From positions 62,001 through 126,000 of the IMG/VR virus record IMGVR_UViG_3300020178_000002: a stretch of DNA of 64,000 bases; one strand, given 5' to 3'. Within the stretch, counting starts at the first letter, position 1, and every line of letters starts with the position of its first letter. Shown piece after piece: positions 18,556-46,928 of the stretch. The notes under the pieces are model-generated. The model saw only the letters and a program-made list of their open reading frames with translations, did not search any database and had not been told where the DNA came from. The position numbers and the translations under genes were made by a program.

Positions 18556-19041
18556 ATGAGAAGAATCACAGCATCCGAGAAAATCGCCCAGCTTGAAAAG
18601 AGAGTCGCTCAACTTGAAAAAGAAAGCTTTGACTTAAAGCAGATTCCAGATTGGCTCTTTGGAAGAGTGGATTCTAAAATGGAAGACCTTCATACACAAC
18701 TTAACTACAACTTCAAAAATCTTTTTGGAAACAAGGTTAAAATCACCTATCCTGTTAAACAACAGATCAAAAACCCTTTTAATGTTTCACAAGCTAAGTA
18801 TGTAGGTAAGCTCATTGTTGGTCGTGAACACATTAACTACACTGTTCTTGTTCTTAACAACTCTAAAATCCAACTCGAGGGACTCAACCCTTTCTCACCA
18901 GAGCAGTTCTATAAGTCTTCTAACTTTGTTTTCTACATCTCTAACAAGAAGGTTGTTTCTTCAAGAGACATTACCTCTGTTGCTTCTTTAGAAGCTATTG
19001 TAGATGCTATTGAAGCTAAGTACTCTCATATCTTAGCCTAA
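18556..19041 (+). CDS. Hypothetical protein with shared N-terminal leader
   Basis: MRRITASEKIAQLEKRVAQLEKES leader. Confidence 0.75.
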   Translation: MRRITASEKIAQLEKRVAQLEKESFDLKQIPDWLFGRVDSKMEDLHTQLNYNFKNLFGNKVKITYPVKQQIKNPFNVSQAKYVGKLIVGREHINYTVLVLNNSKIQLEGLNPFSPEQFYKSSNFVFYISNKKVVSSRDITSVASLEAIVDAIEAKYSHILA

Positions 19042-19487
19042 ACCCCATCTAAAGGGTGTCTTAAAGAATGATGTGAAGGCTTACTTGATTTGAAGTAGGC
19101 TTCCATTATTCTTACTAGGTCAGAATTTGTCCATGCAATACCATCATTAGATTCTTCTGGTTTTGGTTCTACTACTTCAGGCTCAAAAGGCATTTCTGAA
19201 AGAACTATTGCATGGACATTCTTCCTACCTTGTGCAATAGCTTTTATAGCTCTATGGCAACCATCTATAATATTTCCATTGTGTACTAAGATAGGGAATG
19301 AGAGATCAGCTTCCAATACTCTTCCTATATGATCACACAGGTGTGTCTGACCCCAGAACCATTTTTGTAAAAAAGAGTCTGGTATAGACCATTCAACGAA
19401 TGTTTGGTCTTTCGTCATCTCCCAAAGTTTTTTTACTTCCCATTGGTAAGTCACACCATTTTCAGTGTGGGAATAAGTATGTCCCAT
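19038..19487 (-). CDS. ParB/Srx N-terminal-like domain protein
   Basis: ADLSFPILV....IIDGCHRAIKA. Confidence 0.7.
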   Translation of the reverse strand: MGHTYSHTENGVTYQWEVKKLWEMTKDQTFVEWSIPDSFLQKWFWGQTHLCDHIGRVLEADLSFPILVHNGNIIDGCHRAIKAIAQGRKNVHAIVLSEMPFEPEVVEPKPEESNDGIAWTNSDLVRIMEAYFKSSKPSHHSLRHPLDGV

Positions 19488-19491
19488 GTGT

Positions 19492-21270
19492 TTACTCCAT
19501 GCTAGAGAGCATCTCTAAGTTTGCTTTTAATCTTCTTCTGTAACTAGGGTCTCTTTTAACCCTACTAGCAATTCTTTGCAGAGCTGCTTTTTTGTTTCCT
19601 TTGAACTTCTTTTTAATAAAGTCAGCAACGATACCAACAGTCTTAATGCCTTGACTAAAGAGGTATTTAACTAGCCAACCTAGTAGTATAAAAGGTTCTG
19701 ATGCGATTGCAAAGAGAATACCTACCAAAGCAGTAATAAAAGAAGCAGAGCTTAAAAGGATAGATAAAGTAGTAGATCCTAATACAACACCCATTTTTCT
19801 TAGGTGTGAAGCTGTAAACTTAGCATTTGTTAGCAATGCAAAGATGGCTACAAAAACAATGAACCCACCAGCAGAAGTTGCAGCACCCATTAGCACTGTT
19901 TTTGCAGAAAGAGCTTTACCTGTAAAGAGGAAACTCTTAAGGTAAGGCCAGATAAGCTTAAAAGCAGCTATTTTCAGCCCAACAAAAATTGATTTAACTG
20001 CTAATATCTTAGTGTCTGGCAACAAAGATAGATACTTCATTATCTCAGAATACTTGCGAATAGAGTACATCAAAACAATTTGTGCTTTAGAAGAAGGCTC
20101 TTTGAAGTTTGGTATTTCGTGTAGGCTAAATTTACCTTTTTGTACAGACTTGTACTCATCATACTTTCTTCTAAGCTCAAACAACTCTCCTTTTAGCAAA
20201 GCCTCATCTGCTCTATTGTCAGCCAGCTCAATCTTCTCTTCTAGTTCTCTAATTTGCATAGCTACAGATTCAAACTTTGAATTATTCTCAGCTACAACTT
20301 CTCTGTACTTTTGAGAAATTGTACTTTTAATGTCTTTCATATCTTCAAAGCTAGTAGTAAGAAACCATCCTTCTTTTAGATTTATATACTCATCTAACAA
20401 AGAAAGGTACTCTTTGTAGTTTGGATCAAAGCCAAAAAATTTCTCTAGACGTTCAAATGGTATATTTGCAGCCATAGCTACTTCGCCTAGAGTTTTTGCT
20501 TTAACTAAAGTAACGACATTATCCGCCCAGATTGCAGGATTCCTTTGAGGGTCAAATTCATCTAAAACCATCTGTGCGAAAGGGTTGTGCTCTGCCATTT
20601 TCTTTACTGTCTTTGGAGTATACTCAACAAACATAGGCCAAAGAGAGCCTAAGTGTATTTTTTTATTCAAGACAGCTCCAATCAAGTACTTAACCTTAGC
20701 AACCATTCCCTTATCTATCTTCTTGCTTGCTTTTTCAGAGATGTCATTAATGACAGTAGCAGTAGCATCTAAAACTACTTTCTCTTTATCAGAAGCAAGT
20801 CTTCTATTGTCAGACATAAGGTGTGCAAGAATTAAGTTATTCATACTAGCTTTTTTACTGTGTTTCATTTTCCAAGACTTCCATTTGCTATGTGCAGGAC
20901 TAGATTTGAGTGAGGGGTCATGCCCCCAATTTCTGAGACTGATTTCCCATTTGGACATTCCAGAGCCCTTAATAGGTTGTCCTGGTTTGCCACCTAACAT
21001 ACGAGAGTTAAAACCATTCTCCTGAGCAGCATTATCAAAGTCTTGAGCTGTCCATTTGTCGAATGGCTTCGACTTTCTTCTCTTTATTCTGTGAAAAGAG
21101 TCATAGCCAGATTGTATATCACCAGCTTCTTCTGCTTCTTCTCTATTAATTGAAGCAAGAAGCCTATCATCATTCTTTGCCCATGAGTCTAAAGACTTCT
21201 GACTCATGTTTATAAGTGACTTCCACTTATTGTAGATTTCTTTTTTTTCTTCTGGTGATCTTTTGGCCAT
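19492..21270 (-). CDS. DUF3140-like N-terminal domain fused to a coiled-coil and multi-TM region
   Basis: INMS..L..W and SLRNWGHDP signature of DUF3140; C-terminal hydrophobic helices; KKAS, RLAS and RIAS motifs; AAGGAGG RBS. Confidence 0.7.
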   Translation of the reverse strand: MAKRSPEEKKEIYNKWKSLINMSQKSLDSWAKNDDRLLASINREEAEEAGDIQSGYDSFHRIKRRKSKPFDKWTAQDFDNAAQENGFNSRMLGGKPGQPIKGSGMSKWEISLRNWGHDPSLKSSPAHSKWKSWKMKHSKKASMNNLILAHLMSDNRRLASDKEKVVLDATATVINDISEKASKKIDKGMVAKVKYLIGAVLNKKIHLGSLWPMFVEYTPKTVKKMAEHNPFAQMVLDEFDPQRNPAIWADNVVTLVKAKTLGEVAMAANIPFERLEKFFGFDPNYKEYLSLLDEYINLKEGWFLTTSFEDMKDIKSTISQKYREVVAENNSKFESVAMQIRELEEKIELADNRADEALLKGELFELRRKYDEYKSVQKGKFSLHEIPNFKEPSSKAQIVLMYSIRKYSEIMKYLSLLPDTKILAVKSIFVGLKIAAFKLIWPYLKSFLFTGKALSAKTVLMGAATSAGGFIVFVAIFALLTNAKFTASHLRKMGVVLGSTTLSILLSSASFITALVGILFAIASEPFILLGWLVKYLFSQGIKTVGIVADFIKKKFKGNKKAALQRIASRVKRDPSYRRRLKANLEMLSSME

Positions 21271-21302
21271 AAGACACCTCCTTACACTACCTTATTTATA
21301 CT

Positions 21303-21315
21303 TATAAATAGATTA
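21303..21315 (-). promoter_or_regulatory. Putative late promoter motif
   Basis: TAATCTATTTATA, 32 nt upstream of 21270; identical to 16583. Confidence 0.6.
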
Positions 21316-21726
21316 GTGATAAGTGATGTGGTTGTACCCATGAATTAAGTCTGGAAAAAGATCCATGATGTCTAAAGATTGGATATTAACTGCTTCAGCT
21401 ACATCTTCAAGATTACAAGAAATAGCACTAGGGTAGTTGCTACTTTTGTCGTATAGCACACCAATGACTTTTCTGTTCCCTATAATATCTTGAATTAAAA
21501 ACCAGATGTAAACAAAATCTGAGTTGAGCATTTTTTTGTTTACAAATTTAACCCACTCCTCATTACTTCCCAGAAGAAGCTCTATGTTTTCATAATCTTC
21601 TTCTGTATAATAAGCGTGTGGTGGCATAGTAGTTAAATCTACACCTTTCTCTATAGCAATCCTTGCGTGGTTCTGCATAAAAGAGATACATGAGTTAAGT
21701 AATTTATTATGGAGGATGTTTGACAT
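21313..21726 (-). CDS. Hypothetical protein
   Basis: ORF; probable start ATG 21726 (MSNILH). Confidence 0.55.
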   Translation of the reverse strand: MSNILHNKLLNSCISFMQNHARIAIEKGVDLTTMPPHAYYTEEDYENIELLLGSNEEWVKFVNKKMLNSDFVYIWFLIQDIIGNRKVIGVLYDKSSNYPSAISCNLEDVAEAVNIQSLDIMDLFPDLIHGYNHITYH

Positions 21727-21970
21727 GAAGCCCAAACCTTTCAAATCTAAAGAATATATTGTTGAGTTTAAAAAATATGGCAACCTGATATCTCAGTTGC
21801 GTAATGTTCTTTCTTCTTATAGAAATAGCAGTAGCTTATGGGAAAACAATGACCTATTAAACCAAACTAAGAGATGTCAGAAAGAATTAGATTCTCTGAT
21901 GGGTATGATAAGCAGTATTGAAAAGAAAGAATCAGCCAGACTAAGGAAAGAGAAAAATGCCAACTTATAA
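21725..21970 (+). CDS. Hypothetical coiled-coil protein
   Basis: GGAGG 9 nt before ATG 21725. Confidence 0.55.
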   Translation: MKPKPFKSKEYIVEFKKYGNLISQLRNVLSSYRNSSSLWENNDLLNQTKRCQKELDSLMGMISSIEKKESARLRKEKNANL

Positions 21971-22142
21971 CTACAGGTGCAAAAAAGAAGAGTGCAAACA
22001 CGAGTTTGAAAAAATGCACAAGATGAATGACCCTAAGCCTGACTGTCCTAAGTGTAAAGAACCAGACCCAGAGAAGCTAATTTCTAAGAGTGGTACTTTT
22101 ATACTAAAGGGCAAAGGCTGGTTTAATACAGGTGGCTACTAG
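21957..22142 (+). CDS. FmdB-family zinc ribbon protein
   Basis: MPTYNYRC...C.HEFE...CPKC...FILKGKGWFNTGGY. Confidence 0.88.
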   Translation: MPTYNYRCKKEECKHEFEKMHKMNDPKPDCPKCKEPDPEKLISKSGTFILKGKGWFNTGGY

Positions 22143-22465: not shown

Positions 22466-22475
22466 TTTATTTATA
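22463..22475 (+). promoter_or_regulatory. Putative late promoter motif
   Basis: TAGTTTATTTATA upstream of TopIB; overlaps the upstream stop codon. Confidence 0.5.
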
Positions 22476-22504
22476 CTTTGCTGTAGGCAACAAGTGCAGC
22501 AAAG

Positions 22505-23851
22505 GTGTTGAAGATGACTACTAAGAAGAAAAAGATTAAAGAAAAGAAACAGCTTGCCTTTCAAAAAAAGTCAGCAGCCGCTTTTAGAGCTTTAGGGAGA
22601 GCTGTTTATAGACATAGGCACAAAGCTAGGAAAAAGTACCCTAGCAGGTCAAATGAGTCGTTTAAGAAAAGAGGTAGATGGCTTATCCGCTTTCTGGATA
22701 AAGAACCTAAGACCATAGAATTTCTTGATACCTTTATTGGAACAGAAGATATGAATCCTCGAACAAAAGGTTGGAGAAGAAAAGTCTTAGAGCTTCTCTC
22801 TCTTTACCTTTTAAACAAGATCACATTGAGAGAAGCCTCTAAACTATTTGTGCCTATAGCTGCTAAGTCTTATGAAGTTGTTGCTTTAAACAAACAGCAA
22901 AATAAGATTCAAAAAACATTGCCACCAGAGATCATGGCCTTTTTGCCTAGCTCTATTGTTGTAGAAGTAGACAAAAACAACAACATCAAGGGCATCAATG
23001 ATATGTTTGTAAATGATACATATACATTGAAGGAAAAAATAAAGACCCAGAAGAAGCTAGTTTACCGATACAACACTATTGTTAAGCAAGTAAAGAAAGA
23101 TATGAAATCCAGAGATGAGATTACTAAGCTCTGTGCTTTAGTTACTTCCATCATAATGGAAACAGGCATTAGACCTGGAAAGATTGGTAATAGTGCTGTC
23201 AAGATTATAGAAGACAAGAAGATAGAAGTAGAGACTTTTGGAGCTGTTTCTCTCAATGCAGACCATGTGTCTTTTGTTAAAGACAACTTTGCAGAATTAA
23301 AGTTTGTAGGTAAGAAGGGTGGCTTGAACACAGCATCTCTCAAAGACTCAGATGTGATCAAAGTTTTAAAAGACTATGTAGATAACTCATTGAAGTCTGG
23401 TTCTAAGTACATATTTACAACTAGAGATGGTGAACAGTTTGATTACAAAGACCTTTCAAGCTACTTTAGGAAGAACTTTAAGGGCTTTAAAATCACAGAC
23501 TTTAGAAAGCTAAGAGCTACTAGAACTGTTTTTGAGGTTCTTAAAGATGAAAGAAGAAATATGCTAGGCAGGATCAAAGAGATTGCGTCTGGTGAGGTTG
23601 AGTCTATCAAAGCTAAAGCTACCGAAGAGATTGTTAAAACAATAGAATTGGCTCACCAGCAGGCACAGGCTGCCTTGAGTCACATGGATTCAAGCACAAC
23701 TCAAGATGCTTATATTAACCCTCAGGTTCTCTTACGCTTCTTAAGCACTGCAAAGATAGAGTCTTCTTTTAGAGACTATATCATGCAAGGCAAAACAAAG
23801 TTCAGATTTGATCCTATGATGTTTGTTAAAGAAGCTGAGAAGCTGGCATAA
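22505..23851 (+). CDS. DNA topoisomerase IB
   Basis: Catalytic pentad in order: TGIRPG (R), FVGKKG (K), TDFRK (R), LSH (H), AYINP (Y). Confidence 0.85.
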   Translation: MLKMTTKKKKIKEKKQLAFQKKSAAAFRALGRAVYRHRHKARKKYPSRSNESFKKRGRWLIRFLDKEPKTIEFLDTFIGTEDMNPRTKGWRRKVLELLSLYLLNKITLREASKLFVPIAAKSYEVVALNKQQNKIQKTLPPEIMAFLPSSIVVEVDKNNNIKGINDMFVNDTYTLKEKIKTQKKLVYRYNTIVKQVKKDMKSRDEITKLCALVTSIIMETGIRPGKIGNSAVKIIEDKKIEVETFGAVSLNADHVSFVKDNFAELKFVGKKGGLNTASLKDSDVIKVLKDYVDNSLKSGSKYIFTTRDGEQFDYKDLSSYFRKNFKGFKITDFRKLRATRTVFEVLKDERRNMLGRIKEIASGEVESIKAKATEEIVKTIELAHQQAQAALSHMDSSTTQDAYINPQVLLRFLSTAKIESSFRDYIMQGKTKFRFDPMMFVKEAEKLA

Positions 23852-24933: not shown

Positions 24934-25008
24934 TTAAATTTCCTTTTGTGTAATATAATACCTAATCTAATGTGTTTTTTTTCTTAGATCGAACACTATA
25001 CTTATAGA

Positions 25009-26430
25009 TTACTCTAAAGAAGTTCCTTTAATTTCTTTAATCTTATCAGAGATTTTTTTGAGGTACTTATCCGTAGTAGCCTCTATGCTTTTTAGTTCTA
25101 TACCTGTAAACTCAAAATACTGCATAGCTTCTTCATTATCTAATAGCTGTTTAGCTACCTCTGATGTACTGATTTCACCTTGGTAATTCTCACCTTCTTC
25201 ATTGGTTATATAGCACAAACAAAGCTCTCCTTGAGGGTTTTCCTTTGTGAAAACATAACATTTATCTCTGATATAGGTTGAGGAGCTAGGGTCTGATGGT
25301 TTGTAGCCCTCTCTCTTATCAATTTCCTCTAAGACTTTTTGAGCATGTTCAATAGGGTACTCTAAAAGCATACCTTCCATATACCCATATGGCTTAGTTC
25401 CAAGTACAAGATGTTTTCTTCCTGTGCTATATATGTTGAAAGACCTTGATAGGTTATTAACATGGCCTCTTCTCTTTTTTGTGATTAGCTCTGGAAAGAT
25501 AGGTTCATACATAAGAGAGCCATAGACGAAAACCTTTAGAGTGTTTTCATGTGGGGCCATTAGAGGAATGTCTAACTTATTTTTTTCTAGGTTTGACAGA
25601 GTGACTTCACCCTCATCATTTAGATAAATACGCTTAACACAAAACTTACATTTCTCTTTGCCCTTGAAGTGTTTCTCATAGCCCTCATAAATACTATCTT
25701 CATCTATTAGGATTACAGTCATTCTTTTATACACAGGGTCTAATATGATCTGATTAGAAGTGAACATATTGTCTGTCTTTCTAACCACATTAAAAGGATT
25801 ATGTATGTCCTTTATTCTTTGAGTATAAAGCTTTTTGACTAGATCCATTGGAGATCTTTTGTAGGATTGCATTGCTTTCAATGCAGTATTGTATCTCGTT
25901 TCAGAAGATTCCCTATCTTCACCCTCAAGGTAGCCTGCGTCTGGGTGTCTAATACCGTGATTAGTTCTAACAAAGTGTTTATCTGTAATCTCCTCAACCT
26001 TTGGAGAATGCAAGCTTGTTTGTTCTACAATAAAAGTGTTCTTACCATCCGTGATAATATTATGACCTCTAACACCATTCCTATGGTGTGTCATTACATG
26101 AAGTGCTTCTAAAAGAGAATTACACTCTAAAGCCTTTAGAAACCTCCAAGCATCTCCTGAGAATCTGTTTCTATCTCCAGGTCTTTTTTTCTTACCCTCT
26201 TTTTCATCAGAGATTACAGCAAGAGCAGCATTTGTTATTGCAATACCATGCTCATTAATGCCCTCTACCCAGCCCGATATAGTATCTTGGAAATAAAGTA
26301 TTTCAGTGCCATTTTCAGCCCTTACATGGTATATCTTAAAAGTAGGGACATAGTTCCTATCTCTATTTTTGAACACTATCTTTCTATTTCCTACTTCAGT
26401 GAGTGCAATCACACAAGCGTTTTTATCCAT
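25009..26430 (-). CDS. Fusion: Cys-type Ntn hydrolase + gamma-glutamylcyclotransferase (GGCT/ChaC-like)
   Basis: C6-VIAL, KNRDR, GINEHGI, RTNH (Ntn); VFVYGSLM, IDKREGY (GGCT). Confidence 0.75.
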   Translation of the reverse strand: MDKNACVIALTEVGNRKIVFKNRDRNYVPTFKIYHVRAENGTEILYFQDTISGWVEGINEHGIAITNAALAVISDEKEGKKKRPGDRNRFSGDAWRFLKALECNSLLEALHVMTHHRNGVRGHNIITDGKNTFIVEQTSLHSPKVEEITDKHFVRTNHGIRHPDAGYLEGEDRESSETRYNTALKAMQSYKRSPMDLVKKLYTQRIKDIHNPFNVVRKTDNMFTSNQIILDPVYKRMTVILIDEDSIYEGYEKHFKGKEKCKFCVKRIYLNDEGEVTLSNLEKNKLDIPLMAPHENTLKVFVYGSLMYEPIFPELITKKRRGHVNNLSRSFNIYSTGRKHLVLGTKPYGYMEGMLLEYPIEHAQKVLEEIDKREGYKPSDPSSSTYIRDKCYVFTKENPQGELCLCYITNEEGENYQGEISTSEVAKQLLDNEEAMQYFEFTGIELKSIEATTDKYLKKISDKIKEIKGTSLE

Positions 26431-26910: not shown

Positions 26911-27975
26911 CTACCAGACTTGGAAGTGAACTCCTAAAGACCAAGTGTTAGTTCCATCAGATCCTGCTACCCAACCGAGACCAGGTGCTAGGTTTAGGTT
27001 CTTACCTAGCAAATAAGGATGCCATGTTGCTTTTGCCCCCAAGAAAACATTTGAGGGAGTGATAACACCATTAGCACCTATTCTGTATTGGCCTTTCTGG
27101 AAGTTAAGTAAACTTGCTCCGATGGAAAGCCCAAATTCATTCGCTTGATAAGTACTGCCTACCAAAAGACTAGGTTCAAAAAGTTTTAACAAAGTAGAGT
27201 TCTGAGCATCTTTTTTAGGTACATATATGAGCTTACTGTCAAGGTTAGGGTCGCCTTTTATGAGCTTGCTTTCAAGACCTGGTATTGGAACAAAATTGCC
27301 TTCTTGAACATAGCCACCTAATACATGAATCCCTTGATTCTGAACAGCACCAGAACCCAATCTTGATTGATCTTCACCATATGTGATGGCTACAACTTTA
27401 AAGGCTAAGTTAAGGTCAATGCTTCCAAGACCTTTCCATAGATTCAGAGAAGAGAATCTAGCTAGTGGTTTGCCATTTACTTGATAAGGAGACTCCCATT
27501 CAAAAGTGAATGGGGTACATTTATCTGGGTGGTCAGAGCATCTAGTTATATCTAGTCCGTCTACACCTTTCCAAGACGGGGGTGGTGCTGTTTTTTCTTT
27601 TACAGTCCTACCTATTTTCCCAATCCCTTTTTTAATCCTACCCTCCATACCTAAAACTCTTTGAGAGATACTATCTACCCTAGCACCTGTTTCTTTTGTG
27701 TATTTGTAAATAGCATCTTGTGTTCTTTGGTCTAGATTCGAAATAATCTTTGAAGATTGTTCTTCTAGCTCTTTCCTTGAAACCATTTGAGATTTAACAA
27801 CATTAATCTCATCTCTGGTCTCTGACAAGATTCTAGCAGTCTTACTTAACTCTCCATTCATTTGTTTCTGAATAGTGTTGTCTAACTGACTTATCTTATA
27901 GGTCATCCATGCATTGTTAGCAAGAGAGAGTGTGAGCAGACCTGAAGCTATATATGCTGCTATTTTAATATCCAT
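26911..27975 (-). CDS. Envelope protein: N-terminal TM, coiled coil, C-terminal beta-strand region (spanin-like candidate)
   Basis: IAAYIASGLLTLSLA anchor; ends WSLGVHFQVW; AAAGGA RBS at ATG 27975. Confidence 0.55.
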   Translation of the reverse strand: MDIKIAAYIASGLLTLSLANNAWMTYKISQLDNTIQKQMNGELSKTARILSETRDEINVVKSQMVSRKELEEQSSKIISNLDQRTQDAIYKYTKETGARVDSISQRVLGMEGRIKKGIGKIGRTVKEKTAPPPSWKGVDGLDITRCSDHPDKCTPFTFEWESPYQVNGKPLARFSSLNLWKGLGSIDLNLAFKVVAITYGEDQSRLGSGAVQNQGIHVLGGYVQEGNFVPIPGLESKLIKGDPNLDSKLIYVPKKDAQNSTLLKLFEPSLLVGSTYQANEFGLSIGASLLNFQKGQYRIGANGVITPSNVFLGAKATWHPYLLGKNLNLAPGLGWVAGSDGTNTWSLGVHFQVW

Positions 27976-27981
27976 TTTATT
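27969..27981 (+). promoter_or_regulatory. Putative late promoter motif
   Basis: TATCCATTTTATT, 38 nt upstream of 28020. Confidence 0.45.
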
Positions 27982-28019
27982 GTCCTTTGTCTTAGGCATC
28001 ATTAAAAAAGAGGTATATA

Positions 28020-28868
28020 ATGAATAAAATATCAACACAAGAAATTAGAAAGCTTGAAATTAGGATAGCAAGGTTAGAGAAGGAGTCCAAGATTCTTGAT
28101 TGGTTGAAGTCTATCCCTATAAACCTACTCTCTAAGATTCAAGACTCCTTTGGAGAAATTTCTTCTCTTTTAAAGCTTACCTTAAAAAAGAATAAGGAAA
28201 GTATCTTAGAGGGCTTAGTTAAGTTCTTAGAAGTTAGAGTCAGCAGTGCATTAGATAAATCTCTTATGTCTGGATACCCTATTAGGTTTTATATCACTAA
28301 TTTTGACCCAAACAATCCTATGAACTCTGAAGCCCAGCTTATGGTTAAAGAAGTAGGTGGTGAGTTAAAATCTTATGAAGCTACTATCCGAGATATGCCA
28401 TCAATGCTTAAAGATGTTGAGGGTCTACCCCCTAGCATAGATAAAGATATTAAAGGTGCATATATTTCATGGTGGAAAGACTTTGAAGAAGAACTAAAAA
28501 TGCTTCGTGAAGGAAGGATGAGTAGGTCTACGGATTTGAAATCTTTCTGGAACAGAATCAAAGGTGCAAGTAAGTTTCTTTACAGGTTCTTGAGAGTTGT
28601 CTACAGCTTTAAATGGGCTTATGAAGTGTTCTCTTTAGTTGTGATGTTTACAACCCTAATGCCTTTGGCAGAAGTTGCACCAGAAAGAGGGAAGACCCTC
28701 ACTTATCTAGGTGTTGGTAAGATGATCTTAAACATATTTGAAAAGGTTCTTCGCAGAAGAAAAGTAAATATGGATCTCTTTGATGAGCTTGCAGCTAAAA
28801 AAGCATCTTCTCACCCTTACCCATATTGTAATAGCTTAGTCTCTCATTACGAAAGGGTTTGCAAGTGA
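28020..28868 (+). CDS. Leader-bearing membrane protein (paralogue of 29547-30425)
   Basis: IRKLEIRIARLEKES leader; GAYISWWKD; RRRKVN...KKAS tail. Confidence 0.75.
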   Translation: MNKISTQEIRKLEIRIARLEKESKILDWLKSIPINLLSKIQDSFGEISSLLKLTLKKNKESILEGLVKFLEVRVSSALDKSLMSGYPIRFYITNFDPNNPMNSEAQLMVKEVGGELKSYEATIRDMPSMLKDVEGLPPSIDKDIKGAYISWWKDFEEELKMLREGRMSRSTDLKSFWNRIKGASKFLYRFLRVVYSFKWAYEVFSLVVMFTTLMPLAEVAPERGKTLTYLGVGKMILNIFEKVLRRRKVNMDLFDELAAKKASSHPYPYCNSLVSHYERVCK

Positions 28869-29494
28869 GGCAACTAACAGCATCACAGAAAATCGCTATC
28901 CTTGAGAACAGAGTAGCTCAACTTGAAAAACAAGCAATGCTTGAAAGCATCTTAGCTAAGATAAAAAGCAAGTTGTCCCGATTCAAGCCCCTTAAGGTAG
29001 CTCAACATGTGGCCAAAGACTCTAAAATGACAGTGGGGAAGTTTGAAGCCTTAGCAAAAGCGAATCCAAAGGAACTTAAAGAGTTAAAGAAAGCTGTGAG
29101 GTCTTCTAATCCTCAAACCTCTATTTTAAAGCTATTAGACATTTACAATAATAAAGAAAATGCAATCTATTTGAAAAGTGTATATGGGATAGATCTTGAG
29201 TCTCAAGAAAGAACAAAGAATGCAAGGAAGCTAGTTCAGCTCAACAGTCTGCCTGACTTTGCTCTCTATTTTGGTAGTATCATAGCCTTTTTTATTTGTG
29301 ATTTCGTTGTTGAGCTTTTATTTGACTATCTCCTTGAACTGATAGCTGAAGATCTCGAGAAATCAGACAATGTATTCAGGAAACTTAAACGTGCTTGCCT
29401 CTACTTGATCTTAGCACCTACTATGGGATTACACATACTACTTTCTGGGATCAAAGAAGGGCTGAAAGCAATGAACCCTTTTGCGTTTTTTTAA
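28865..29494 (+). CDS. Leader-bearing membrane protein
   Basis: GTG start overlapping the upstream TGA; RQLTASQKIAILENRVAQLEKQA leader; two C-terminal TM segments. Confidence 0.75.
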   Translation: MRQLTASQKIAILENRVAQLEKQAMLESILAKIKSKLSRFKPLKVAQHVAKDSKMTVGKFEALAKANPKELKELKKAVRSSNPQTSILKLLDIYNNKENAIYLKSVYGIDLESQERTKNARKLVQLNSLPDFALYFGSIIAFFICDFVVELLFDYLLELIAEDLEKSDNVFRKLKRACLYLILAPTMGLHILLSGIKEGLKAMNPFAFF

Positions 29495-29507
29495 TAACTG
29501 TTTTATA
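29495..29507 (+). promoter_or_regulatory. Putative late promoter motif
   Basis: TAACTGTTTTATA, 39 nt upstream of 29547. Confidence 0.55.
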
Positions 29508-29546
29508 GTCCACACCACTTTAGACAAATCGAAGAAAGAATAAACC

Positions 29547-30425
29547 ATGAGACAACTAACAGCATCACAAAAAATCGCTATTCTTGAGAACAGAGTGGCT
29601 CAACTTGAAAAGCAAGCAATCATTCAAATGATTAAGAATCTGGGAATGAACTGGTTTAAACCTCTAATTGCAGCAGCTCAAGACCTTGTGTCCACTTTCA
29701 AGGGGTCAATTATAAGTAATAGAGATACTTTTGCTTCTGCTGCTGAAATGAACTTACAGGCGAGACTGACCGAAGCTCTCCAAAGAAATATGTTTTTTGG
29801 GAAAACCACATCAATAAGTGTTGAAAAATTTGATGCTAAAAACCCAGTAAACTCTGTTTTGAAAGTCTCCTATTCTGTAAATGGAGAACCCAGGTTTCTT
29901 GATTTCACTCTGAGTTCTGTACAGAAAATTAGAGAGATTGACAGTAAAACCCAAAAAGACATTATGGGAGCATATGTTTCATGGTGGAAAGATTGGGGTG
30001 ATTCTCTGGATATTGTAATCAATGGCAAATCTCCATCAAAAAGTATGGTTCAGAGCGTAATTGATTTTTTCTCTAGGAAGTTTAAGTTCCTTGGGAGATT
30101 GCTTTCTGCACTAGTTAAATTTGGAACAAAAATAAGAACCCTAACCCTGATCCCTACTTTAGTAGCATCTTTAATAGTTTGCCTTTGTGGACCTCTCGGC
30201 CTAGTTGTTGGTAGTACTGTAGCTATGAACCAAATTGGGTTAATGACACTACCAAAAGTTGTAGACATGATTCTTAAGATGATTGAGGGTGCTTTCAGAA
30301 GAAGAAAAGTAAACATTGATAAGTTCAATGAAATAATTGGCAAACAAGCATCTGTGAATAAGTATGCAAGTAAATACCCACACACATATTCTATGTTATT
30401 AAGACTTGAGGGTGCTGGAGTCTAA
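29547..30425 (+). CDS. Leader-bearing membrane protein (paralogue of 28020-28868)
   Basis: MRQLTASQKIAILENRVAQLEKQA; GAYVSWWKD; RRRKVN...KQAS. Confidence 0.75.
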   Translation: MRQLTASQKIAILENRVAQLEKQAIIQMIKNLGMNWFKPLIAAAQDLVSTFKGSIISNRDTFASAAEMNLQARLTEALQRNMFFGKTTSISVEKFDAKNPVNSVLKVSYSVNGEPRFLDFTLSSVQKIREIDSKTQKDIMGAYVSWWKDWGDSLDIVINGKSPSKSMVQSVIDFFSRKFKFLGRLLSALVKFGTKIRTLTLIPTLVASLIVCLCGPLGLVVGSTVAMNQIGLMTLPKVVDMILKMIEGAFRRRKVNIDKFNEIIGKQASVNKYASKYPHTYSMLLRLEGAGV

Positions 30426-30426
30426 T

Positions 30427-31118: not shown

Positions 31119-33719
31119 ATGTTTAATGATATGCTTGCAGAGCTACTCAGACCTACAATCAACCCAAAAGGTTGGATGAAGGACTGTGAGCTACTACTAG
31201 GAACTGAAAGTAATCTTGAAGAATGTATTCAAGAATGTATGAATGCACCTGATGGTGTGTATGGCTTAGACCTTGAAACAACAGGGTTAGACAATCGTGT
31301 ATTTAATGGTGTCACCAGAGACAAGATTGTGGGTGTCTGTCTTGCCCCTCATAAAGATAAAGGCTACTACTTCCCTCTTGCCCATGCGGAGGGGTCAAAA
31401 CACAATATCTCATGGAGAGTTATGGGGGATGCCCTCAAGCGTTTGTTTGATCTTGAAGTAAAGTCAGACCCTGTGTTCCATAATGCTTCTTTTGACCAAG
31501 AGTTTCTTGAGTTCAATGGGTATGTAGACAGGCTAGGCAAAGAGAGATGGGACAATCAAAAGAGGTGGCATGATACGCTTATTATCAAGTATCTTCTCAA
31601 CCCAAGAGAAAAGGGTGGTCGTGGTTTAAAGCATCTTTCTAAAGTATTGCTTGAAAGAGAGATGATTGAGCTTGAAGACCTAATGCCAGATGCTGTGGAT
31701 AAAAACTATTCTACTTTAGACCCTAGCTGGGATCCCTGTGTTTTATATGCATCAGCAGATGCCATGAACACAGTTGGAATCTTCAACATTCTGAACAAAG
31801 AGTATGAAGAAGATACAGCTCACACTAAGTTCATCTACAACCTTGAGAAGAAAACTTTGTTATGTACTCGTTGGATGATGAGGAATAGGGTTCATGTAGA
31901 CAGGAAAACAGCACTCAAGTTTTGTCAAGAGGGTCAAGAGCTTTGGTTCAATGCATTGCTTGAAGTATATGAGGGTGCTAAAGACATACTTGGTCGAGAC
32001 ATTACTCCAAACTATGTTCGTATCTTAAAAGGTGACATTAAAGGTCTGAATCTTTTCAACCACATGGAAGTAGAGGGTGCAAGCTATAAGACTCGAGTGG
32101 ATGAAGCTCGTAAGGAAGCAAACAGACTACACCCAGACACAAAAGAAACTATCACTAAGCCTGTTAAGAGGTTAAGTAGCGATAAGTTTAAAAAGGCAGA
32201 AGGCTTTGAAGATGTAGACTTCCCTTTAACCTATGATATTCTTTCACCTCAACAGTTAGGTCTGTTGTTTAGAGAGTTAGATGTTCCAGGTCTGATGGTC
32301 ACGGAGAAGTCTGGTCAAGTAGCGACAGGGAAAGATGCTATTGATTCTGTGATTGAGGAAGCCTCTGAGGGATTCCCATTCATGGCAAAGATTAAAACCT
32401 TCCGAGAGCTTGGTAAAGCATTGGGTCAGTACCTTATTCCATTCGTAGAAGATGTAGGTCCAGATGGCACACTCAAACCTAAGTTTGATCAGTTTTCTGC
32501 TGACACAGGTCGCTTTTCTTGCAAGACAAACAGTAGACCTTGGAAAGTCAAAGATGGTGGTTGTCGTGTACCATTTCAAGGTATTCCAGCCACCTATGAC
32601 AAGAACAAGCCTAAATGCATATCTAAAATGAGACAGTGTATCTCTGTAAGGGATGACAACTATTGGTTAGCGGCCATTGACTATGCAGGTGTGGAATTAA
32701 GGTTGGTGACTAACCTATCTAAAGAGCCTAAGTGGATTGATGCTTTCTTCTCTTGTTCTGAATGTGGAAAGAAATATCAGCAAGAGCTTGGTGACGATGG
32801 CTTTGTTATTGCACCACCAAGTCTTTGTTCATGTGGTTCAGATAAGATTGGTGATCTTCACACAGGTACTGCTGTTGCTTTCTATGGAGAGGGTTCAAAG
32901 AAGCAAGACAATTGGAAAGTCCTTCGTGGTAATGGTAAGGCTTGTAATTTTGCCCTTTGTTATGGTGGTACAGGCAAGGCTGTTCAAAGGTCTATTGGCT
33001 GTGACGCTAAAGAGGGTGATGAAAAGTACAGAGTCTTTACCAAGACTTACTCTGGACTTACAGGTTGGTGGTCTCAACAACATAAGTTTGCTCGAAAGGC
33101 AGGTTATGTGAAAACTGCTATGGGCAGAGTACAGCCTTTACCAGACATCAACTCTGATCAGTTTAGGTTTAAGAGTAAAGATGAACGAAAGGCATTGAAC
33201 GGACCGATTCAAGGAACAAGTGCAGATGTTACCAAGTTAGCTATGGCTCTCATTTATGAGAATGTCCAAAAGCGAGGTTGGGAAGATAAGCTGTTAATGG
33301 TTTTAACAGTCCATGACGAAATTGTATTTGAGATCCACAAAGACATTCTTAAAGAGGCTATTGAAATGATTTCAGACCTTATGACTAAGAACAATGTGGT
33401 TCAAAAAATGAATTGGCCTATTCCATTACTTGTAGACGTTGAGTTAGGTAAGGATTGGACTGTTCCTTATGACTTGAAGGACATTATGCAAGCAGATGGA
33501 GACCCAGAGCTTGTTAAAATATTTGAGGGAGAGAAGCCTGAAGAGGTTGTCGAGACAGTAGAAGCTGTGGAAGTACCTACTATTTTAACATTTGAGGTAT
33601 TGAGCCTTGATGAAGAAACAGCAGATAAAATTGCTGAGTGGATTAAAGAAAGAAAACTACTCAATGATGAGTGGGATGTGTCCTACGAGGGCAGATCAGT
33701 AAAAGTATTATTTGAATAA
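31119..33719 (+). CDS. polA: DNA polymerase family A with 3'-5' exonuclease
   Basis: LDLETTG, FHNASFD, YASADA (exo); TGRFS, DYAGVELR, GKACNFALCYG, NGPIQGTSAD, TVHDE. Confidence 0.95.
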   Translation: MFNDMLAELLRPTINPKGWMKDCELLLGTESNLEECIQECMNAPDGVYGLDLETTGLDNRVFNGVTRDKIVGVCLAPHKDKGYYFPLAHAEGSKHNISWRVMGDALKRLFDLEVKSDPVFHNASFDQEFLEFNGYVDRLGKERWDNQKRWHDTLIIKYLLNPREKGGRGLKHLSKVLLEREMIELEDLMPDAVDKNYSTLDPSWDPCVLYASADAMNTVGIFNILNKEYEEDTAHTKFIYNLEKKTLLCTRWMMRNRVHVDRKTALKFCQEGQELWFNALLEVYEGAKDILGRDITPNYVRILKGDIKGLNLFNHMEVEGASYKTRVDEARKEANRLHPDTKETITKPVKRLSSDKFKKAEGFEDVDFPLTYDILSPQQLGLLFRELDVPGLMVTEKSGQVATGKDAIDSVIEEASEGFPFMAKIKTFRELGKALGQYLIPFVEDVGPDGTLKPKFDQFSADTGRFSCKTNSRPWKVKDGGCRVPFQGIPATYDKNKPKCISKMRQCISVRDDNYWLAAIDYAGVELRLVTNLSKEPKWIDAFFSCSECGKKYQQELGDDGFVIAPPSLCSCGSDKIGDLHTGTAVAFYGEGSKKQDNWKVLRGNGKACNFALCYGGTGKAVQRSIGCDAKEGDEKYRVFTKTYSGLTGWWSQQHKFARKAGYVKTAMGRVQPLPDINSDQFRFKSKDERKALNGPIQGTSADVTKLAMALIYENVQKRGWEDKLLMVLTVHDEIVFEIHKDILKEAIEMISDLMTKNNVVQKMNWPIPLLVDVELGKDWTVPYDLKDIMQADGDPELVKIFEGEKPEEVVETVEAVEVPTILTFEVLSLDEETADKIAEWIKERKLLNDEWDVSYEGRSVKVLFE

Positions 33720-42957: not shown

Positions 42958-42997
42958 AACAGAACTCCTTCTTCAATCGAGTGTCATATAAAGAGTA

Positions 42998-45037: not shown

Positions 45038-45065
45038 GTTAACCTCTCTTTTTTAGTATAGGCTT

Positions 45066-45078
45066 AATAAAAGACATA
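45066..45078 (-). promoter_or_regulatory. Putative late promoter motif
   Basis: TATGTCTTTTATT, 28 nt upstream of 45037. Confidence 0.55.
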
Positions 45079-45129
45079 GTGATAGTTAATCTATTGCTTG
45101 TCACTTTTGCTAAATAAAGGAGTTCATCT

Positions 45130-46464
45130 ATGAGTAAATACAACGCTATAAGAGAAGAGAATGAAAAGTTTAATGCATGGATTCTTGAAGAAGAAGAGGC
45201 AGGTGGCTTCTTTGATCCTATAGAAGAAAGAAAAGTTAGGTTTTTTAATGAACTGAGTGAAGAAGGCAAGGAGAAAGCATACGAAGAATTTGAAGCTACC
45301 AAAGAAATCAAAGACATTAAAAGATATAGGGCTCTGGCATTTCAGGGCAAGCTTTTTGCTTTGCGGTGGTTGTTAAAAAGATCTAAGGATTTTGAAGAAT
45401 TTAAAGAGCCTTTAGAAAACAAAACCAAGAAATTAGATCTCAGTCCTAGTAAAGATCGAAGAACAAAAATCAAAGATATGACCCAGACCAAAGCAAGAGA
45501 CTTATACTTGGAAGATGTTATATTTGATGACTTAGACCTATCTTGGTCAGACTTCTCGGGTAGCACTCTAGTCAACTGTAGTTTTAATAACACAACACTG
45601 ACAGGTGCAAAGTTTGTAAACTGTTCTTTACAGATAGTAGACTTTGGTGGTGCAGACCTCACCTTAGTGGACTTCAAAAATGTGGATCTTCGAGCCACCA
45701 AGGACTTTGGTAAGGCAACAATTAAGCAAACCAACTTATCTGGTGCTGATGTTAGAGGTGTTGATCTAAGAGGTGCTGGAGAAAGTAAGGAAGATCTTTT
45801 CTATGTTAGTCCAACAACTAAATTTGATGTTACTAACAAAAAGCTGATTACTAAAGTGCCTATTTACATGGAGAAGTTTGATGTTCTGTTAAAAAACATA
45901 GAAGACCAAATCAATAAAGGAAAAGAAATTGGATATGATAAGTCTAAAGTCAAAGAACTAAAAAAATATCTTAATGAAAATACATTTAAGGTCTTCTATG
46001 GAGATAGGATATTAAAAGTACTAGACTACTACAAAAAAGAGCTTTCTTGGAGAAAACGCTTGCCAGATTCCTTTTTGCCTTTTTCTTATTCTTTTAAAGA
46101 CTTAAAGAAGTTCTTTAGGAACACTGACAGCCAAGTTAAGAATATGGTTAGCAAGATTAATCAAAAGATTGGCTCAAAGAGATATGTACTGACAGAGCCT
46201 GTTAATACTAACAGCCATACTAACAGATTAAAGGGCAAGATAGTCTATGGGGGAAATCTTTTAGGTTTATCTCAAACAGTGCCCTATTACATAATTGTAA
46301 ACATTGGAAATTCTGGCTTTGGCCTTAGAAGATTTTATACACCAGAGTCTTATATCTTCTGCATACCTCAAAAGAGTTGCTCATCCGAATTTGAAGAATT
46401 TGGTCAAAGAGAGCTAGGTACTATTGTTATGAAGATAGAAGACTTAATCTGGAGAGAACGTTAG
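45130..46464 (+). CDS. Pentapeptide-repeat protein with extra N- and C-terminal domains
   Basis: LDLSW SDFSG STLVN CSFNN TTLTG AKFVN...ADLTL VDFKN VDLRA; AAGGAG RBS. Confidence 0.85.
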   Translation: MSKYNAIREENEKFNAWILEEEEAGGFFDPIEERKVRFFNELSEEGKEKAYEEFEATKEIKDIKRYRALAFQGKLFALRWLLKRSKDFEEFKEPLENKTKKLDLSPSKDRRTKIKDMTQTKARDLYLEDVIFDDLDLSWSDFSGSTLVNCSFNNTTLTGAKFVNCSLQIVDFGGADLTLVDFKNVDLRATKDFGKATIKQTNLSGADVRGVDLRGAGESKEDLFYVSPTTKFDVTNKKLITKVPIYMEKFDVLLKNIEDQINKGKEIGYDKSKVKELKKYLNENTFKVFYGDRILKVLDYYKKELSWRKRLPDSFLPFSYSFKDLKKFFRNTDSQVKNMVSKINQKIGSKRYVLTEPVNTNSHTNRLKGKIVYGGNLLGLSQTVPYYIIVNIGNSGFGLRRFYTPESYIFCIPQKSCSSEFEEFGQRELGTIVMKIEDLIWRER

Positions 46465-46928
46465 TACTGATATAAAGCCATGATCTTTTGACGCTGGCGA
46501 GGTGTTCTAACGCTATTTTTGACGATAGTTTTAATGTTCTGGATGATGAATTTAGGGTTTTCAGAAGAGAAGTTAGGCACTACCACTAAATTAAATTGTT
46601 CTCTGGTGTATATACTTGTTAAGTAAACCCTTAGTAGGTCTTGCTCCTTATCAAGCTCTACATTAATAAACATAAGTTGTTGTCTATCATTTTTGATATG
46701 ACCTCGTGCCTCTAATTGGTATATTTTATTGGGCTTTTTGATGTAGCCATCATCACCTTTGGTGTTTGCAAGACCATAGTCTACCAGAGCATCTCCTGTT
46801 CCGTTAGCTATTGCCTTAAGGGTTTCTTTAATTTTATCTCCAAAAATGTCAAATAGTCCAGCTTCTTTTTCAAGCCTGGCGATTCTCATTTCAAGAGATC
46901 TGATTTGTTGTGCTGCTGTTCTTCTCAT
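46461..46928 (-). CDS. Hypothetical protein with shared N-terminal leader
   Basis: MRRTAAQQIRSLEMRIARLEKEA from ATG 46928 (AGGA RBS). Confidence 0.75.
   Translation of the reverse strand: MRRTAAQQIRSLEMRIARLEKEAGLFDIFGDKIKETLKAIANGTGDALVDYGLANTKGDDGYIKKPNKIYQLEARGHIKNDRQQLMFINVELDKEQDLLRVYLTSIYTREQFNLVVVPNFSSENPKFIIQNIKTIVKNSVRTPRQRQKIMALYQY

What the first reader, a model, noticed from the sequence alone, without database searches (positions are those of the whole stretch)
18556..46928. Portable N-terminal leader on unrelated proteins: candidate capsid-targeting / maturation signal with a [K/R]-x-[A/S] cleavage code
Seen: five dispersed genes start with the same 23-24 aa leader. They are 18556 MRRITASEKIAQLEKRVAQLEKES, 28020 MNKISTQEIRKLEIRIARLEKES, 28865 and 29547 (M)RQLTASQKIAILENRVAQLEKQA, and 46928(-) MRRTAAQQIRSLEMRIARLEKEA. 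Similarity stops right after LEK-[EQ]-[AS], and the bodies are mostly unrelated. All five are in units headed by the TA-N5-TTTAT motif that also precedes the tail tube. Known: T4 internal proteins carry a short capsid-targeting leader removed by the prohead protease after Glu, and phiKZ head proteins are also cut after Glu. Inference: this is an analogous cargo-loading tag with a different specificity (basic P3, Ala/Ser P1), which would let the phage package and inject varied payloads. This is my best candidate for the undescribed system.
Basis: partly seen in the sequence, partly recalled or inferred. Interest (0 to 1): 0.9.

Follow-up and report, generated by a model that had tools for sequence, protein, structure and literature searches.

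The report
Shared leader tag in huge phage
An uncultured 312-kb phage and its relatives put the same 24-residue N-terminal tag on hundreds of unrelated small proteins, most likely to load them into the phage head (and perhaps be clipped off there), but no experiment has yet tested this.

Summary
Exactly five ORFs in the window start with a 23-24 aa leader (M-R-x-L-T-A-S-Q-K-I-A-x-L-E-x-R-[IV]-A-x-L-E-K-[EQ]-[AS]). Conservation collapses after residue 24. It is selected at protein level, not at DNA or RNA level. A profile of the leader finds 792 protein clusters (E<=1e-3), almost always starting at residue 1. The best ~165 carry at least 84 unrelated bodies. I found it only in uncultured huge-phage contigs whose major capsid protein resembles phage G gp27. 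In the same 312-kb genome, two diverged leader genes, one a JmjC hydroxylase, lie 1.8-2.5 kb downstream of the capsid gene. The same arrangement holds in 8 of 14 distinct relatives. New evidence concerns the leader's end, [KR]-x-[AS]. It resembles a [KR]-x-A-S motif that is about 10-fold enriched in the neighbouring head protease and scaffold-like protein, sits at their domain boundaries, and is absent from the capsid and decoration proteins. So a capsid-targeting propeptide is the best reading (about 0.5), by analogy and circumstantial evidence only. The promoter argument is weak because the TTTAT core also precedes replication genes. No tail tube was identified, and the cleaved bond is unknown. 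I rate it a new variant of a known kind.

The parts
18556..18627 (+). Leader 1 (24 codons, MRRITASEKIAQLEKRVAQLEKES) of gene 18556-19041 (161 aa; soluble ORFan body; one homolog, P0092, 67% identity)
   Evidence: (leader HMM E 1e-14)
28020..28088 (+). Leader 2 (23 codons, MNKISTQEIRKLEIRIARLEKES) of gene 28020-28868 (282 aa; body family B, hydrophobic C-terminal region; KKAS motif at residues 260-263, nt 28797-28808)
28865..28936 (+). Leader 3 (24 codons, GTG start overlapping the stop of 28020) of gene 28865-29494 (209 aa; body family A, the largest leader family; hydrophobic segments)
29547..29618 (+). Leader 4 (24 codons, same peptide as leader 3; 68 of 72 nt identical, every difference synonymous) of gene 29547-30425 (292 aa; family B paralog of 28020; KQAS and KYAS motifs at nt 30342-30353 and 30360-30371)
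46860..46928 (-). Leader 5 (23 codons, MRRTAAQQIRSLEMRIARLEKEA) of gene 46461-46928 (155 aa; soluble ORFan body; homologs P0077 and P0111). An independent gene caller also uses this start.
18503..18519 (+). Promoter-like motif TAGTCTCTTTATAGCCT, 37 nt upstream of leader gene 1
27966..27985 (+). Promoter-like motif TAATATCCATTTTATTGTCC, 35 nt upstream of the 28020-28865 pair
29492..29511 (+). Promoter-like motif TAATAACTGTTTTATAGTCC, 36 nt upstream of leader gene 4
46966..46985 (-). Promoter-like motif TAATATGTCTTTTATGTCCC upstream of leader gene 5
46983..48812 (-). 609-aa ORFan directly upstream of leader gene 5. Its N-terminus carries two [KR]-x-A-S motifs (residues 16-19 and 24-27), three in all against 0.64 expected. 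Candidate processed protein.
19492..21270 (-). 592-aa protein near leader gene 1 with three [KR]-x-A-S motifs (0.62 expected) and a multi-pass hydrophobic C-terminal region. Candidate processed membrane-active protein.
55008..57033 (-). Two paralogous genes (354 and 322 aa, 37% identity) whose products carry a strictly conserved [KR]-x-A-S at residues 16-19. Candidate short propeptides using the same code. Preceded by TAATAATTCATTTAT.

Best explanation
The 24-residue leader is a portable N-terminal capsid-targeting propeptide of a clade of uncultured huge phages that build their heads with a phage-G-type capsid protein. It is an amphipathic helix of two heptads (I/V at position a, L at d, an invariant Glu, and Arg/Lys) preceded by M-R-x-(L)-T/S-A-S. 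Inferred mechanism: the helix docks the tagged protein onto the assembling procapsid core, either the acidic coiled-coil scaffold-like protein or the inner face of the capsid protein. Unrelated cargo is thereby enclosed: membrane-active proteins of families A and B, a JmjC hydroxylase, pentapeptide-repeat proteins and many ORFans. The head maturation protease then probably cuts at the conserved [KR]-[QE]-[AS] boundary, and perhaps also at the N-terminal [KR]-x-A-S of the short variant. It would do this as it cuts the [KR]-x-A-S sites that mark its own domain boundaries and the scaffold-like protein. The cargo would stay in the head for delivery with the DNA. Shown here: the tag's existence, position, conservation profile, diversity of bodies, restriction to phage contigs, proximity to the head module, and the motif statistics. 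Inferred: packaging, cleavage, the scissile bond, and injection.
For: 1. The tag is N-terminal. 792 protein clusters match the leader profile at E<=1e-3 (45 at <=1e-10) among 1.84 billion representatives. In 157 of 168 analysed proteins the tag starts at residue 1.
2. There is a sharp module boundary. Position 22 is K/R in 98%, position 23 is Q/E in 87%, position 24 is A/S in 97%, and then the signal is gone.
3. The bodies are diverse. 163 representatives fall into 84 BLASTP families, 68 of them singletons, with a median length of 160 aa, and 31% have TM-like segments. Almost none has a Pfam or PHROG hit.
4. Selection acts on the protein, not on DNA or RNA.
5. The tag is phage-restricted. No confirmed match was found in one genome of each of 185,579 bacterial and archaeal species. 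Every long contig carrying the tag that I could check (six) also carries the same capsid gene.
6. There is a link to the head module. In the window's own contig (locus L041) the order is protease, acidic scaffold-like protein, decoration-like protein, then the capsid protein. The capsid protein matches PDB 6wkk, phage G gp27, at E 6e-63 and phrog_2522 at E 1e-51. Two leader genes follow 1.8 and 2.5 kb downstream on the same strand, one with a Cupin_8/JmjC domain at E 3e-22. Among 14 distinct capsid loci, 8 have leader genes within 6 kb downstream (16 genes) and none has one upstream.
7. The protease code is plausible. [KR]-x-A-S occurs 6 times in the L041 scaffold-like protein (0.61 expected) and 5 times in the protease (0.41 expected); 1 of 20,000 shuffles reaches each count. 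It occurs 0 times in the capsid and decoration proteins. Sites are positionally conserved across 13 orthologs and lie at domain boundaries, for example the invariant R-[VI]-A-S at protease residues 25-28. The motif is also enriched in leader-protein bodies (63 against 17 expected) and near the C-termini of 28020 and 29547.
8. Precedents exist. [quoted passage not shown] The N-terminal 30 residues of P1 DarB suffice for packaging (PMC9024508). SPN3US has head proteins with 20- and 24-residue propeptides (PMC10052503).
Against: There is no proteomic, expression or structural evidence. There is no cultured member: phage G, Tunturi_5 and LR745208.1 lack the tag near their capsid genes.

In the window the five leader genes sit among replication and accessory genes, three of them directly upstream of DNA polymerase I. 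Their density downstream of the capsid gene (about 0.2-0.3 per kb) is no higher than in other accessory regions, such as L034 with 6 in 7 kb. The 'downstream of the capsid gene' pattern may therefore only reflect a variable region.

The promoter-like TTTAT core is shared with helicase and topoisomerase genes.

The leader's end matches the scaffold motif only loosely, since position 25 is Ser in just 17%. The strict [KR]-x-A-S lies at residues 3-6 of the short variant, which does not fit a simple 'remove the whole leader' model.

Bodies are enriched, not depleted, in the motif.

The AlphaFold model of family B was poor (pLDDT 55), so it gives no structural support.
Confidence: 0.5

Rival explanations
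1. The leader is a docking or zipper tag for a complex outside the head. The two-heptad helix would recruit unrelated proteins to a common hub during infection, for example a membrane-associated complex built around the TM-bearing families A and B, or a replication or anti-defence factory. No encapsidation or cleavage would be involved.
For: The heptad pattern has an invariant Glu and Arg/Lys placed so that they could form salt bridges between helices (my reading of the logo). 31% of bodies have TM-like segments. The window's leader genes lie among replication genes. Rare internal or C-terminal copies of the helix occur, at L007:4368-5441 and L020:8088-8342.
Against: It does not explain the strict N-terminal position, the invariant small residue at position 24 with an abrupt end of conservation, the resemblance of that boundary to the motif enriched in the protease and scaffold-like protein, or the recurrent placement right after the capsid gene. 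Two heptads are short for a stable free-standing zipper.
Confidence: 0.2
2. The leader is a permanent virion anchor and is not cleaved. It would bind tagged proteins to the portal, the inner capsid wall or another virion part, and it would stay on the mature protein. On this view the [KR]-x-[AS] end is only a helix cap or linker.
For: All the head-module evidence above applies. Position 25 is variable, unlike the Ser of the scaffold and protease motif. SPN3US packages 42 head proteins without cleavage (PMC10052503).
Against: K/R at 98% and A/S at 97% at positions 22 and 24 are hard to explain by helix capping alone. The same tripeptide class recurs at protease and scaffold domain boundaries.
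Confidence: 0.15
3. The leader is a regulatory tag, either a degron or a phospho-site. The N-terminal RR[ST]AS and the helix would mark proteins for timed degradation by the phage protease or a Clp-type protease, or for phosphorylation by a basophilic Ser/Thr kinase. This would control a regulon of accessory proteins after translation.
For: R-R-x-A-S resembles a basophilic kinase site (my own knowledge). The motif is enriched in many non-shell proteins. Phage G encodes ClpP and ClpX (PMC12484599).
Against: No kinase or Clp gene was seen in the parts of this genome that I examined. The long leader variant lacks the basic residue at the required spacing. The motif's concentration in the scaffold-like protein and the protease, and its absence from shell proteins, fits maturation cleavage better.
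Confidence: 0.07
4. There is no protein function. The shared 5' end would be a by-product of gene conversion or duplication, or a nucleic-acid element (a translation-initiation region or an RNA operator).
For: The leaders of 28865 and 29547 are 68/72 nt identical and the identity ends abruptly.
Against: Other pairs share residues through different codons, 8 of 10 for 18556 against 28020. There is no RNA structure signal. The peptide is conserved across phages whose DNA polymerases are only 65-72% identical, and on 84 body families.
Confidence: 0.02

Closest known systems
T4 capsid targeting sequence (CTS) of internal proteins IPI/IPII/IPIII and Alt
   Same: Both are short conserved N-terminal peptides on otherwise diverse, fast-evolving small proteins of one phage, with several tagged genes per genome. 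In T4 the tag directs proteins into the scaffolding core and is removed by the prohead protease (PMC3012670; Mullaney and Black 1996, as cited in PMC10052503).
   Different: There is no sequence similarity. The tag is 24 residues against about 10. It is a two-heptad amphipathic helix. The boundary is [KR]-[QE]-[AS] rather than (L/I)-x-E. The head is phage-G/HK97-type, not T4 gp23-type. There are far more tagged families (at least 84). Packaging and cleavage are untested here.
P1 DarB N-terminal packaging signal (Dar anti-restriction system)
   Same: Both are N-terminal signals of at most 30 residues. In P1 the signal is sufficient to load a heterologous protein into the capsid, and the cargo is anti-defence (PMC9024508).
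   Different: The P1 signal is on one protein and needs helper Dar proteins. Here one tag is shared by many unrelated proteins.
Propeptides and cleavage code of phiKZ-like giant phages (phiKZ gp175, SPN3US gp245)
   Same: Many head and ejection proteins are processed at a short linear motif that recurs in propeptides. The protease auto-processes. Some propeptides are only 20-24 residues long (PMC10052503).
   Different: The cleavage there follows Glu at P1. Those propeptides are not a shared portable sequence. The capsid and protease families are unrelated at sequence level.
Encapsulin cargo-loading (targeting) peptides
   Same: A short terminal peptide on diverse cargo binds the interior of an HK97-fold shell, and cargo genes often sit next to the shell gene (my own knowledge).
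   Different: Encapsulin peptides are usually C-terminal and of Gly/Ser/Leu-rich type and are not cleaved. Here the shell is a bona fide virion capsid protein in a protease-scaffold-decoration-capsid module.
Herpesvirus assemblin and HK97-family prohead protease sites (x-A|S)
   Same: The small-residue Ala-Ser pair in the recurrent motif recalls the (V/L/I)-x-A|S maturation and release sites of herpesvirus assemblin, whose fold phage prohead proteases share (my own knowledge).
   Different: The third-to-last position is basic here. The scissile bond and the catalytic type of this protease are unknown (PHROG match only, no Pfam or PDB match).

Membership tests
T4-type capsid targeting sequence | Short conserved N-terminal peptide shared by otherwise unrelated proteins of the same phage | tested here: met
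   Five genes in the window, at least 10 in the 105 kb of this genome examined, and 84 body families overall.
T4-type capsid targeting sequence | Tag ends at a gp21-type site, (L/I)-x-E, and is cut after Glu | tested here: not met
   The boundary is L-E-[KR]-[QE]-[AS] and conservation ends after A/S. Cleavage itself is not testable with these tools.
T4-type capsid targeting sequence | Sequence homology to the T4 CTS, and a T4-type head (gp23 capsid, gp21 protease) | tested here: not met
   The tagged proteins have no PHROG or Pfam match. The capsid protein is phage G gp27-type.
T4-type capsid targeting sequence | Tag is sufficient to package a foreign protein into the prohead | not testable with these tools
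   Needs a leader-reporter fusion and particle purification.
phiKZ/SPN3US-type prohead-protease propeptides | Cleavage motif (S/A/G)-x-E | tested here: not met
   The recurrent motif here is [KR]-x-A-S.
phiKZ/SPN3US-type prohead-protease propeptides | One short motif recurs in the protease itself and in head-internal proteins at propeptide or domain boundaries | tested here: met
   Scaffold-like protein 6 against 0.61 expected, protease 5 against 0.41 expected (1 of 20,000 shuffles each). Sites are positionally conserved in 13 orthologs. None occurs in the capsid or decoration proteins. That these sites are cleaved is inference.
Encapsulin cargo-loading peptide | Terminal peptide on cargo encoded next to an HK97-fold shell gene | tested here: inconclusive
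   The shell is HK97-type and leader genes follow it in 8 of 14 lineages, but most leader genes are dispersed.
Encapsulin cargo-loading peptide | The shell is a stand-alone nanocompartment (no portal, protease or virion module), and the peptide is usually C-terminal and Gly/Ser/Leu-rich | tested here: not met
   The shell gene lies in a protease-scaffold-decoration-capsid module syntenic with phage G and Tunturi_5. The peptide is N-terminal and helical.
   157 of 168 copies start at residue 1. None is on a recognisable replication protein. There is no confirmed copy in 185,579 species' genomes.

The most novel reading that the evidence does not exclude
The leader and the [KR]-x-A-S code together form a general, programmable protein-packaging-and-release system of phage-G-like huge phages. 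On this reading, any protein given the 24-residue tag is loaded into the procapsid, trimmed by the head protease and delivered with the DNA. These phages would use it to carry dozens of interchangeable effectors: membrane-active proteins, a JmjC protein hydroxylase, DNA-mimic-like pentapeptide proteins and many ORFans.
Probability: 0.35. Interest if true: 0.85.

Novelty: new variant of a known kind. Interest (0 to 1): 0.7.

Why it matters
Huge phages carry many proteins inside the head, and how those proteins are chosen is largely unknown outside T4, P1 and the phiKZ group.

- A single recognisable tag on at least 792 protein clusters would give a sequence-only way to predict the packaged and injected proteome of an uncultured clade. 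It would point to a large pool of candidate early-acting effectors and anti-defence proteins.
- The tag, together with the capsid, scaffold-like and protease genes, would give a minimal set of parts for testing protein loading in a heterologous system.
- The [KR]-x-A-S motif is an independent, testable prediction of the specificity of a prohead protease family that has no Pfam model. Part of it can be tested in the cultured relative Tunturi_5.

Tried and rejected
- PHROG and Pfam scans of the five proteins, of 150 tagged proteins and of most large window ORFs gave almost nothing.
- Megablast of 10 kb of the window against phages found no match.
- A tblastn search of the leader against 50,697 phage records gave only chance hits.
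- The leader HMM found nothing on the regions around the capsid gene of phage G, Tunturi_5 and LR745208.1.
- A scan of cellular genomes gave 549 pattern matches, none confirmed.
- A full-text search for six leader strings found no paper.
- RNA folding of the 5' regions gave no signal.
- The promoter motif as a late-gene marker is rejected. The core also precedes replication genes, although the decoration-capsid operon in L041 does carry TAATA-N5-TTTATAG.
- AlphaFold of family B (pLDDT 55) and of the 354-aa paralog family (pLDDT 49, all-helical, so not a tail tube) were too poor to search by fold. No fold search was run.
- PDB sequence searches of the protease and of the topoisomerase-like gene gave nothing useful.
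- Neighbourhood look-ups of leader proteins on other long contigs showed only arrays of small ORFans.
- The rest of the 312-kb contig was not fetched, so the terminase, portal and tail genes of this phage, and the total number of leader genes, remain unknown.
- The similarity between the leader's end (R-I-A-R-L-E-K-Q-A-S) and the scaffold-like protein's conserved I-A-E-x-R-L-G-[KR]-x-A-S is suggestive, but the HMM does not detect it.
Full report
**1. What the window is.**
The window is positions 62001-126000 of IMG/VR contig IMGVR_UViG_3300020178_000002, which is 312,136 bp long (offsets). GC content is 37-40%. It has no near match among 50,697 phage records. Recognisable genes are few: DNA polymerase I (31119-33719), SNF2, Dda and DnaB-type helicases, three DNA methyltransferases, a topoisomerase-IB-like gene (22505-23851), and a pentapeptide-repeat protein (45130-46464). 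Most ORFs have no PHROG or Pfam match.

**2. The observation.**
A six-frame scan finds the core LE-x-R-[IV]-A-[QR]-LEK five times, always 9-12 residues after an ORF start.

The gene at 28865 starts with GTG and overlaps the stop of the 28020 gene, so those two are probably translationally coupled.

Only the bodies of 28020 and 29547 are related (26-29% identity, E 5e-25). The other pairs show no similarity.

Identical leader residues are frequently encoded by different codons. The 28865/29547 pair differs only at synonymous sites, and its nucleotide identity ends abruptly at codon 24. The 5' coding RNA has no unusual structure. Selection therefore acts on the peptide.

**3. How widespread it is.**
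Related huge-phage contigs carry many copies each. For example, L034 has six leader genes within 7 kb.

A 34-position profile was searched against 1.84 billion representative proteins. It found 792 proteins at E<=1e-3 and 45 at E<=1e-10. In nearly all of the best 150 the match starts at residue 1.

There are two flavours:
- MR[QH]LTASQKIAxLExR[IV]AxLEKQA
- MRR[ST]ASE[IV]IRNLExR[IV]ARLE[KR]Q[AS]

In 164 distinct leaders every position up to 24 is conserved, apart from the two variable positions 12 and 15. Position 22 is K/R in 98%, position 23 is Q/E in 87%, and position 24 is A/S in 97%. Relative entropy then drops from 2.76 to 0.77 bits.

163 representatives fall into 84 body families, 68 of them singletons. 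Median length is 160 aa, and 31% have TM-like segments. Pfam and PHROG recognise almost nothing in the 150 scanned: one pentapeptide-repeat protein, one DUF2958, and a few weak hits.

A scan of one genome from each of 185,579 bacterial and archaeal species gave no confirmed copy. No paper contains the leader strings.

**4. The head module.**
The decisive lead came from locus L020, from a related 296-kb contig. Directly upstream of two leader genes lies a head module. It contains a head maturation protease (phrog_18299, E 6e-15), a 555-aa acidic protein, a roughly 200-aa protein, and a 292-aa major head protein (phrog_2522, E 1e-51).

This capsid protein is 92-97% identical across 80 fetched loci. 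It matches the solved phage G capsid protein gp27 (PDB 6wkk, E 6e-63). It is 47% identical to the capsid protein of Tunturiibacter phage Tunturi_5 and 38% to that of phage G. The gene order protease, 500-700-aa protein, decoration-sized protein, capsid protein is shared with both cultured phages.

In the window's own contig the module is locus L041; the capsid gene lies about 54.6 kb beyond the window's right end. There the capsid gene (L041:10001-10879) is followed on the same strand by two diverged leader genes:
- L041:12636-13202 (188 aa)
- L041:13340-14239 (299 aa, with a Cupin_8/JmjC domain: Pfam E 3e-22; PDB JMJD7, JMJD5 and FIH at about 2e-9)

A second topoisomerase-IB-like gene comes next.

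Locus L019 of the same contig adds three strong leader copies and one weak one. The genome therefore has at least 10 tagged genes in the 105 kb examined.

Among 14 distinct capsid loci with at least 6 kb on both sides, 8 have leader genes within 6 kb downstream (16 genes). None has one upstream. In several lineages the leader gene starts 150-190 nt after the capsid stop, behind a terminator-like hairpin and a TTTAT element.

One caution applies. The upstream side is filled with conserved head genes, and leader density downstream of the capsid gene is similar to that in other accessory regions. This placement is suggestive, not conclusive.

**5. A candidate protease code.**
I aligned 13 orthologs each of the protease and the scaffold-like protein. 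This revealed a recurrent [KR]-x-A-S motif.
- In the protease: an invariant R-[VI]-A-S at residues 25-28, sites just after the catalytic domain, and sites in the C-terminal domain.
- In the scaffold-like protein: G-[KR]-x-A-S, K-K-A-S-[YF], R-[QK]-A-S and S-R-E-A-S blocks, plus further copies in the acidic spacers.

The mean counts are:

| Protein | [KR]-x-A-S per sequence | Shuffled expectation |
|---|---|---|
| Scaffold-like | 7.0 | 0.73 |
| Protease | 3.5 | 0.37 |
| Decoration-like | 0 | 0.11 |
| Capsid | 0.15 | 0.15 |

The looser [KR]-x-[AS] is depleted in the capsid protein, at 2 against 5.4 expected. For the single L041 sequences, 6 against 0.61 and 5 against 0.41 are each reached by 1 of 20,000 shuffles. 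Between 46% and 56% of all Ala-Ser pairs in these two proteins are preceded by [KR]-x, against 0-7% in the shell proteins.

Enrichment in the proteins that must be destroyed and absence from the proteins that must persist is the signature expected of a maturation-protease site, as in T4 and phiKZ-like phages (PMC10052503). That these sites are cleaved is inference.

The motif is also enriched in several other places:
- Tunturi_5 gp332, at 4 against 0.47 expected
- leader-protein bodies, at 63 against 17 expected
- the C-termini of 28020 and 29547
- window ORFs 46983-48812 and 19492-21270
- residues 16-19 of the paralogs at 55969-57033 and 55008-55976

**6. How the leader fits the code.**
The short leader variant starts with M-R-R-[ST]-A-S, which is a strict copy of the motif. 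A-S at positions 6-7 is 99% and 93% conserved in both variants.

The tag may therefore be cut at its end, near its start, or at both. The data cannot say which.

**7. The promoter.**
A very similar TAATA-N5-TTTATAG heads the decoration-capsid operon in L041. However, a TTTAT core at -34 to -50 also precedes a helicase, the topoisomerase-like gene and many other units: 18 of 35 in all, against 13% of random windows. It is consistent with co-expression with head genes but is not diagnostic. No tail tube was identified. The 354-aa candidate family is predicted to be all-helical at low confidence.

**8. Interpretation.**
The best-supported reading is a capsid-targeting propeptide that works like the T4 CTS but is not a member of that family. 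It differs in sequence, length, boundary motif and head type. Precedents are the T4 internal proteins (PMC3012670), P1 DarB (PMC9024508) and the short SPN3US propeptides (PMC10052503).

The rivals, in order of my confidence, are:
- a docking tag for a complex outside the head
- an uncleaved virion anchor
- a degron or phospho-tag
- a nucleic-acid or gene-conversion artefact, which the codon data essentially exclude

Structure prediction gave no help.

**9. Verdict.**
I rate it a new variant of a known kind, interest 0.7.

Noticed in passing
window 55008-57033 (-): Two paralogous genes (354 and 322 aa, 37% identity) whose products start M[IL]NFL..P..F and carry a strictly conserved [KR]-x-A-S at residues 16-19 in all 13 full-length family members aligned. 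This is a candidate 18-19-residue propeptide. The AlphaFold model was all-helical at low confidence.
   Followed up: partly
window 46983-48812 (-) and 19492-21270 (-): Two large ORFans next to leader genes each carry three [KR]-x-A-S motifs (about 0.6 expected). The first has two in its first 27 residues. The second ends in a multi-pass hydrophobic region.
   Followed up: partly
window 62185-63921 (-), running off the right end: This ORF is the C-terminal part of a 3007-residue protein with no Pfam hit, according to the gene calls on a Logan contig.
   Followed up: no
window 54417-54605 (-) and 52061-52432 (-): A 62-aa Hc1 histone-like protein and a 123-aa staphylococcal-nuclease-like protein lie in a block of ORFans.
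   Followed up: no
window 22505-23851 (+) and L041:14337-15704 (+): The phage has two topoisomerase-IB-like genes (Pfam Topoisom_I, E 4e-15 and 4e-17). The second lies in the head-module region just after the leader genes.
   Followed up: partly
window 45130-46464 (+); L019:11963-12691; L034:2339-3340; L007:3580-5740: Pentapeptide-repeat proteins recur beside leader genes. In L007 one carries a leader-like helix internally (residues about 187-210). One short ORF has the leader followed by the start of the repeats. One ends with RKAS/RVAS plus a helix.
   Followed up: partly
L020:8088-8342 (+), same as L074:11137-11418: An 84-aa ORF directly after the capsid gene has the leader-like helix at its C-terminus (the protein ends ...IVRNLERRVARLEKSSR). 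This is the only clear C-terminal copy seen.
   Followed up: no
window 25009-26430 (-): A fusion of an AAT (peptidase C45-like) domain with a ChaC/gamma-glutamyl cyclotransferase domain.
   Followed up: no
L036-L115 compared with L021-L031: The capsid protein is 92-97% identical across the clade, while DNA polymerase I is only 65-72% identical. That is an unusually strong constraint on the shell protein.
   Followed up: no
L116 (phage G, gp13, gp17, gp38): Three phage G proteins near the head module start with M/L-K-R-L-I-[KS]-K. This may be an unrelated short shared N-terminus. The rest of the phage G genome was not scanned.
   Followed up: no
window 16331-16404: The divergent intergenic region holds a near-perfect inverted repeat (TTCATTCGAT...ATCGAATGAA) around an AT-rich centre, between oppositely oriented genes.
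   Followed up: no
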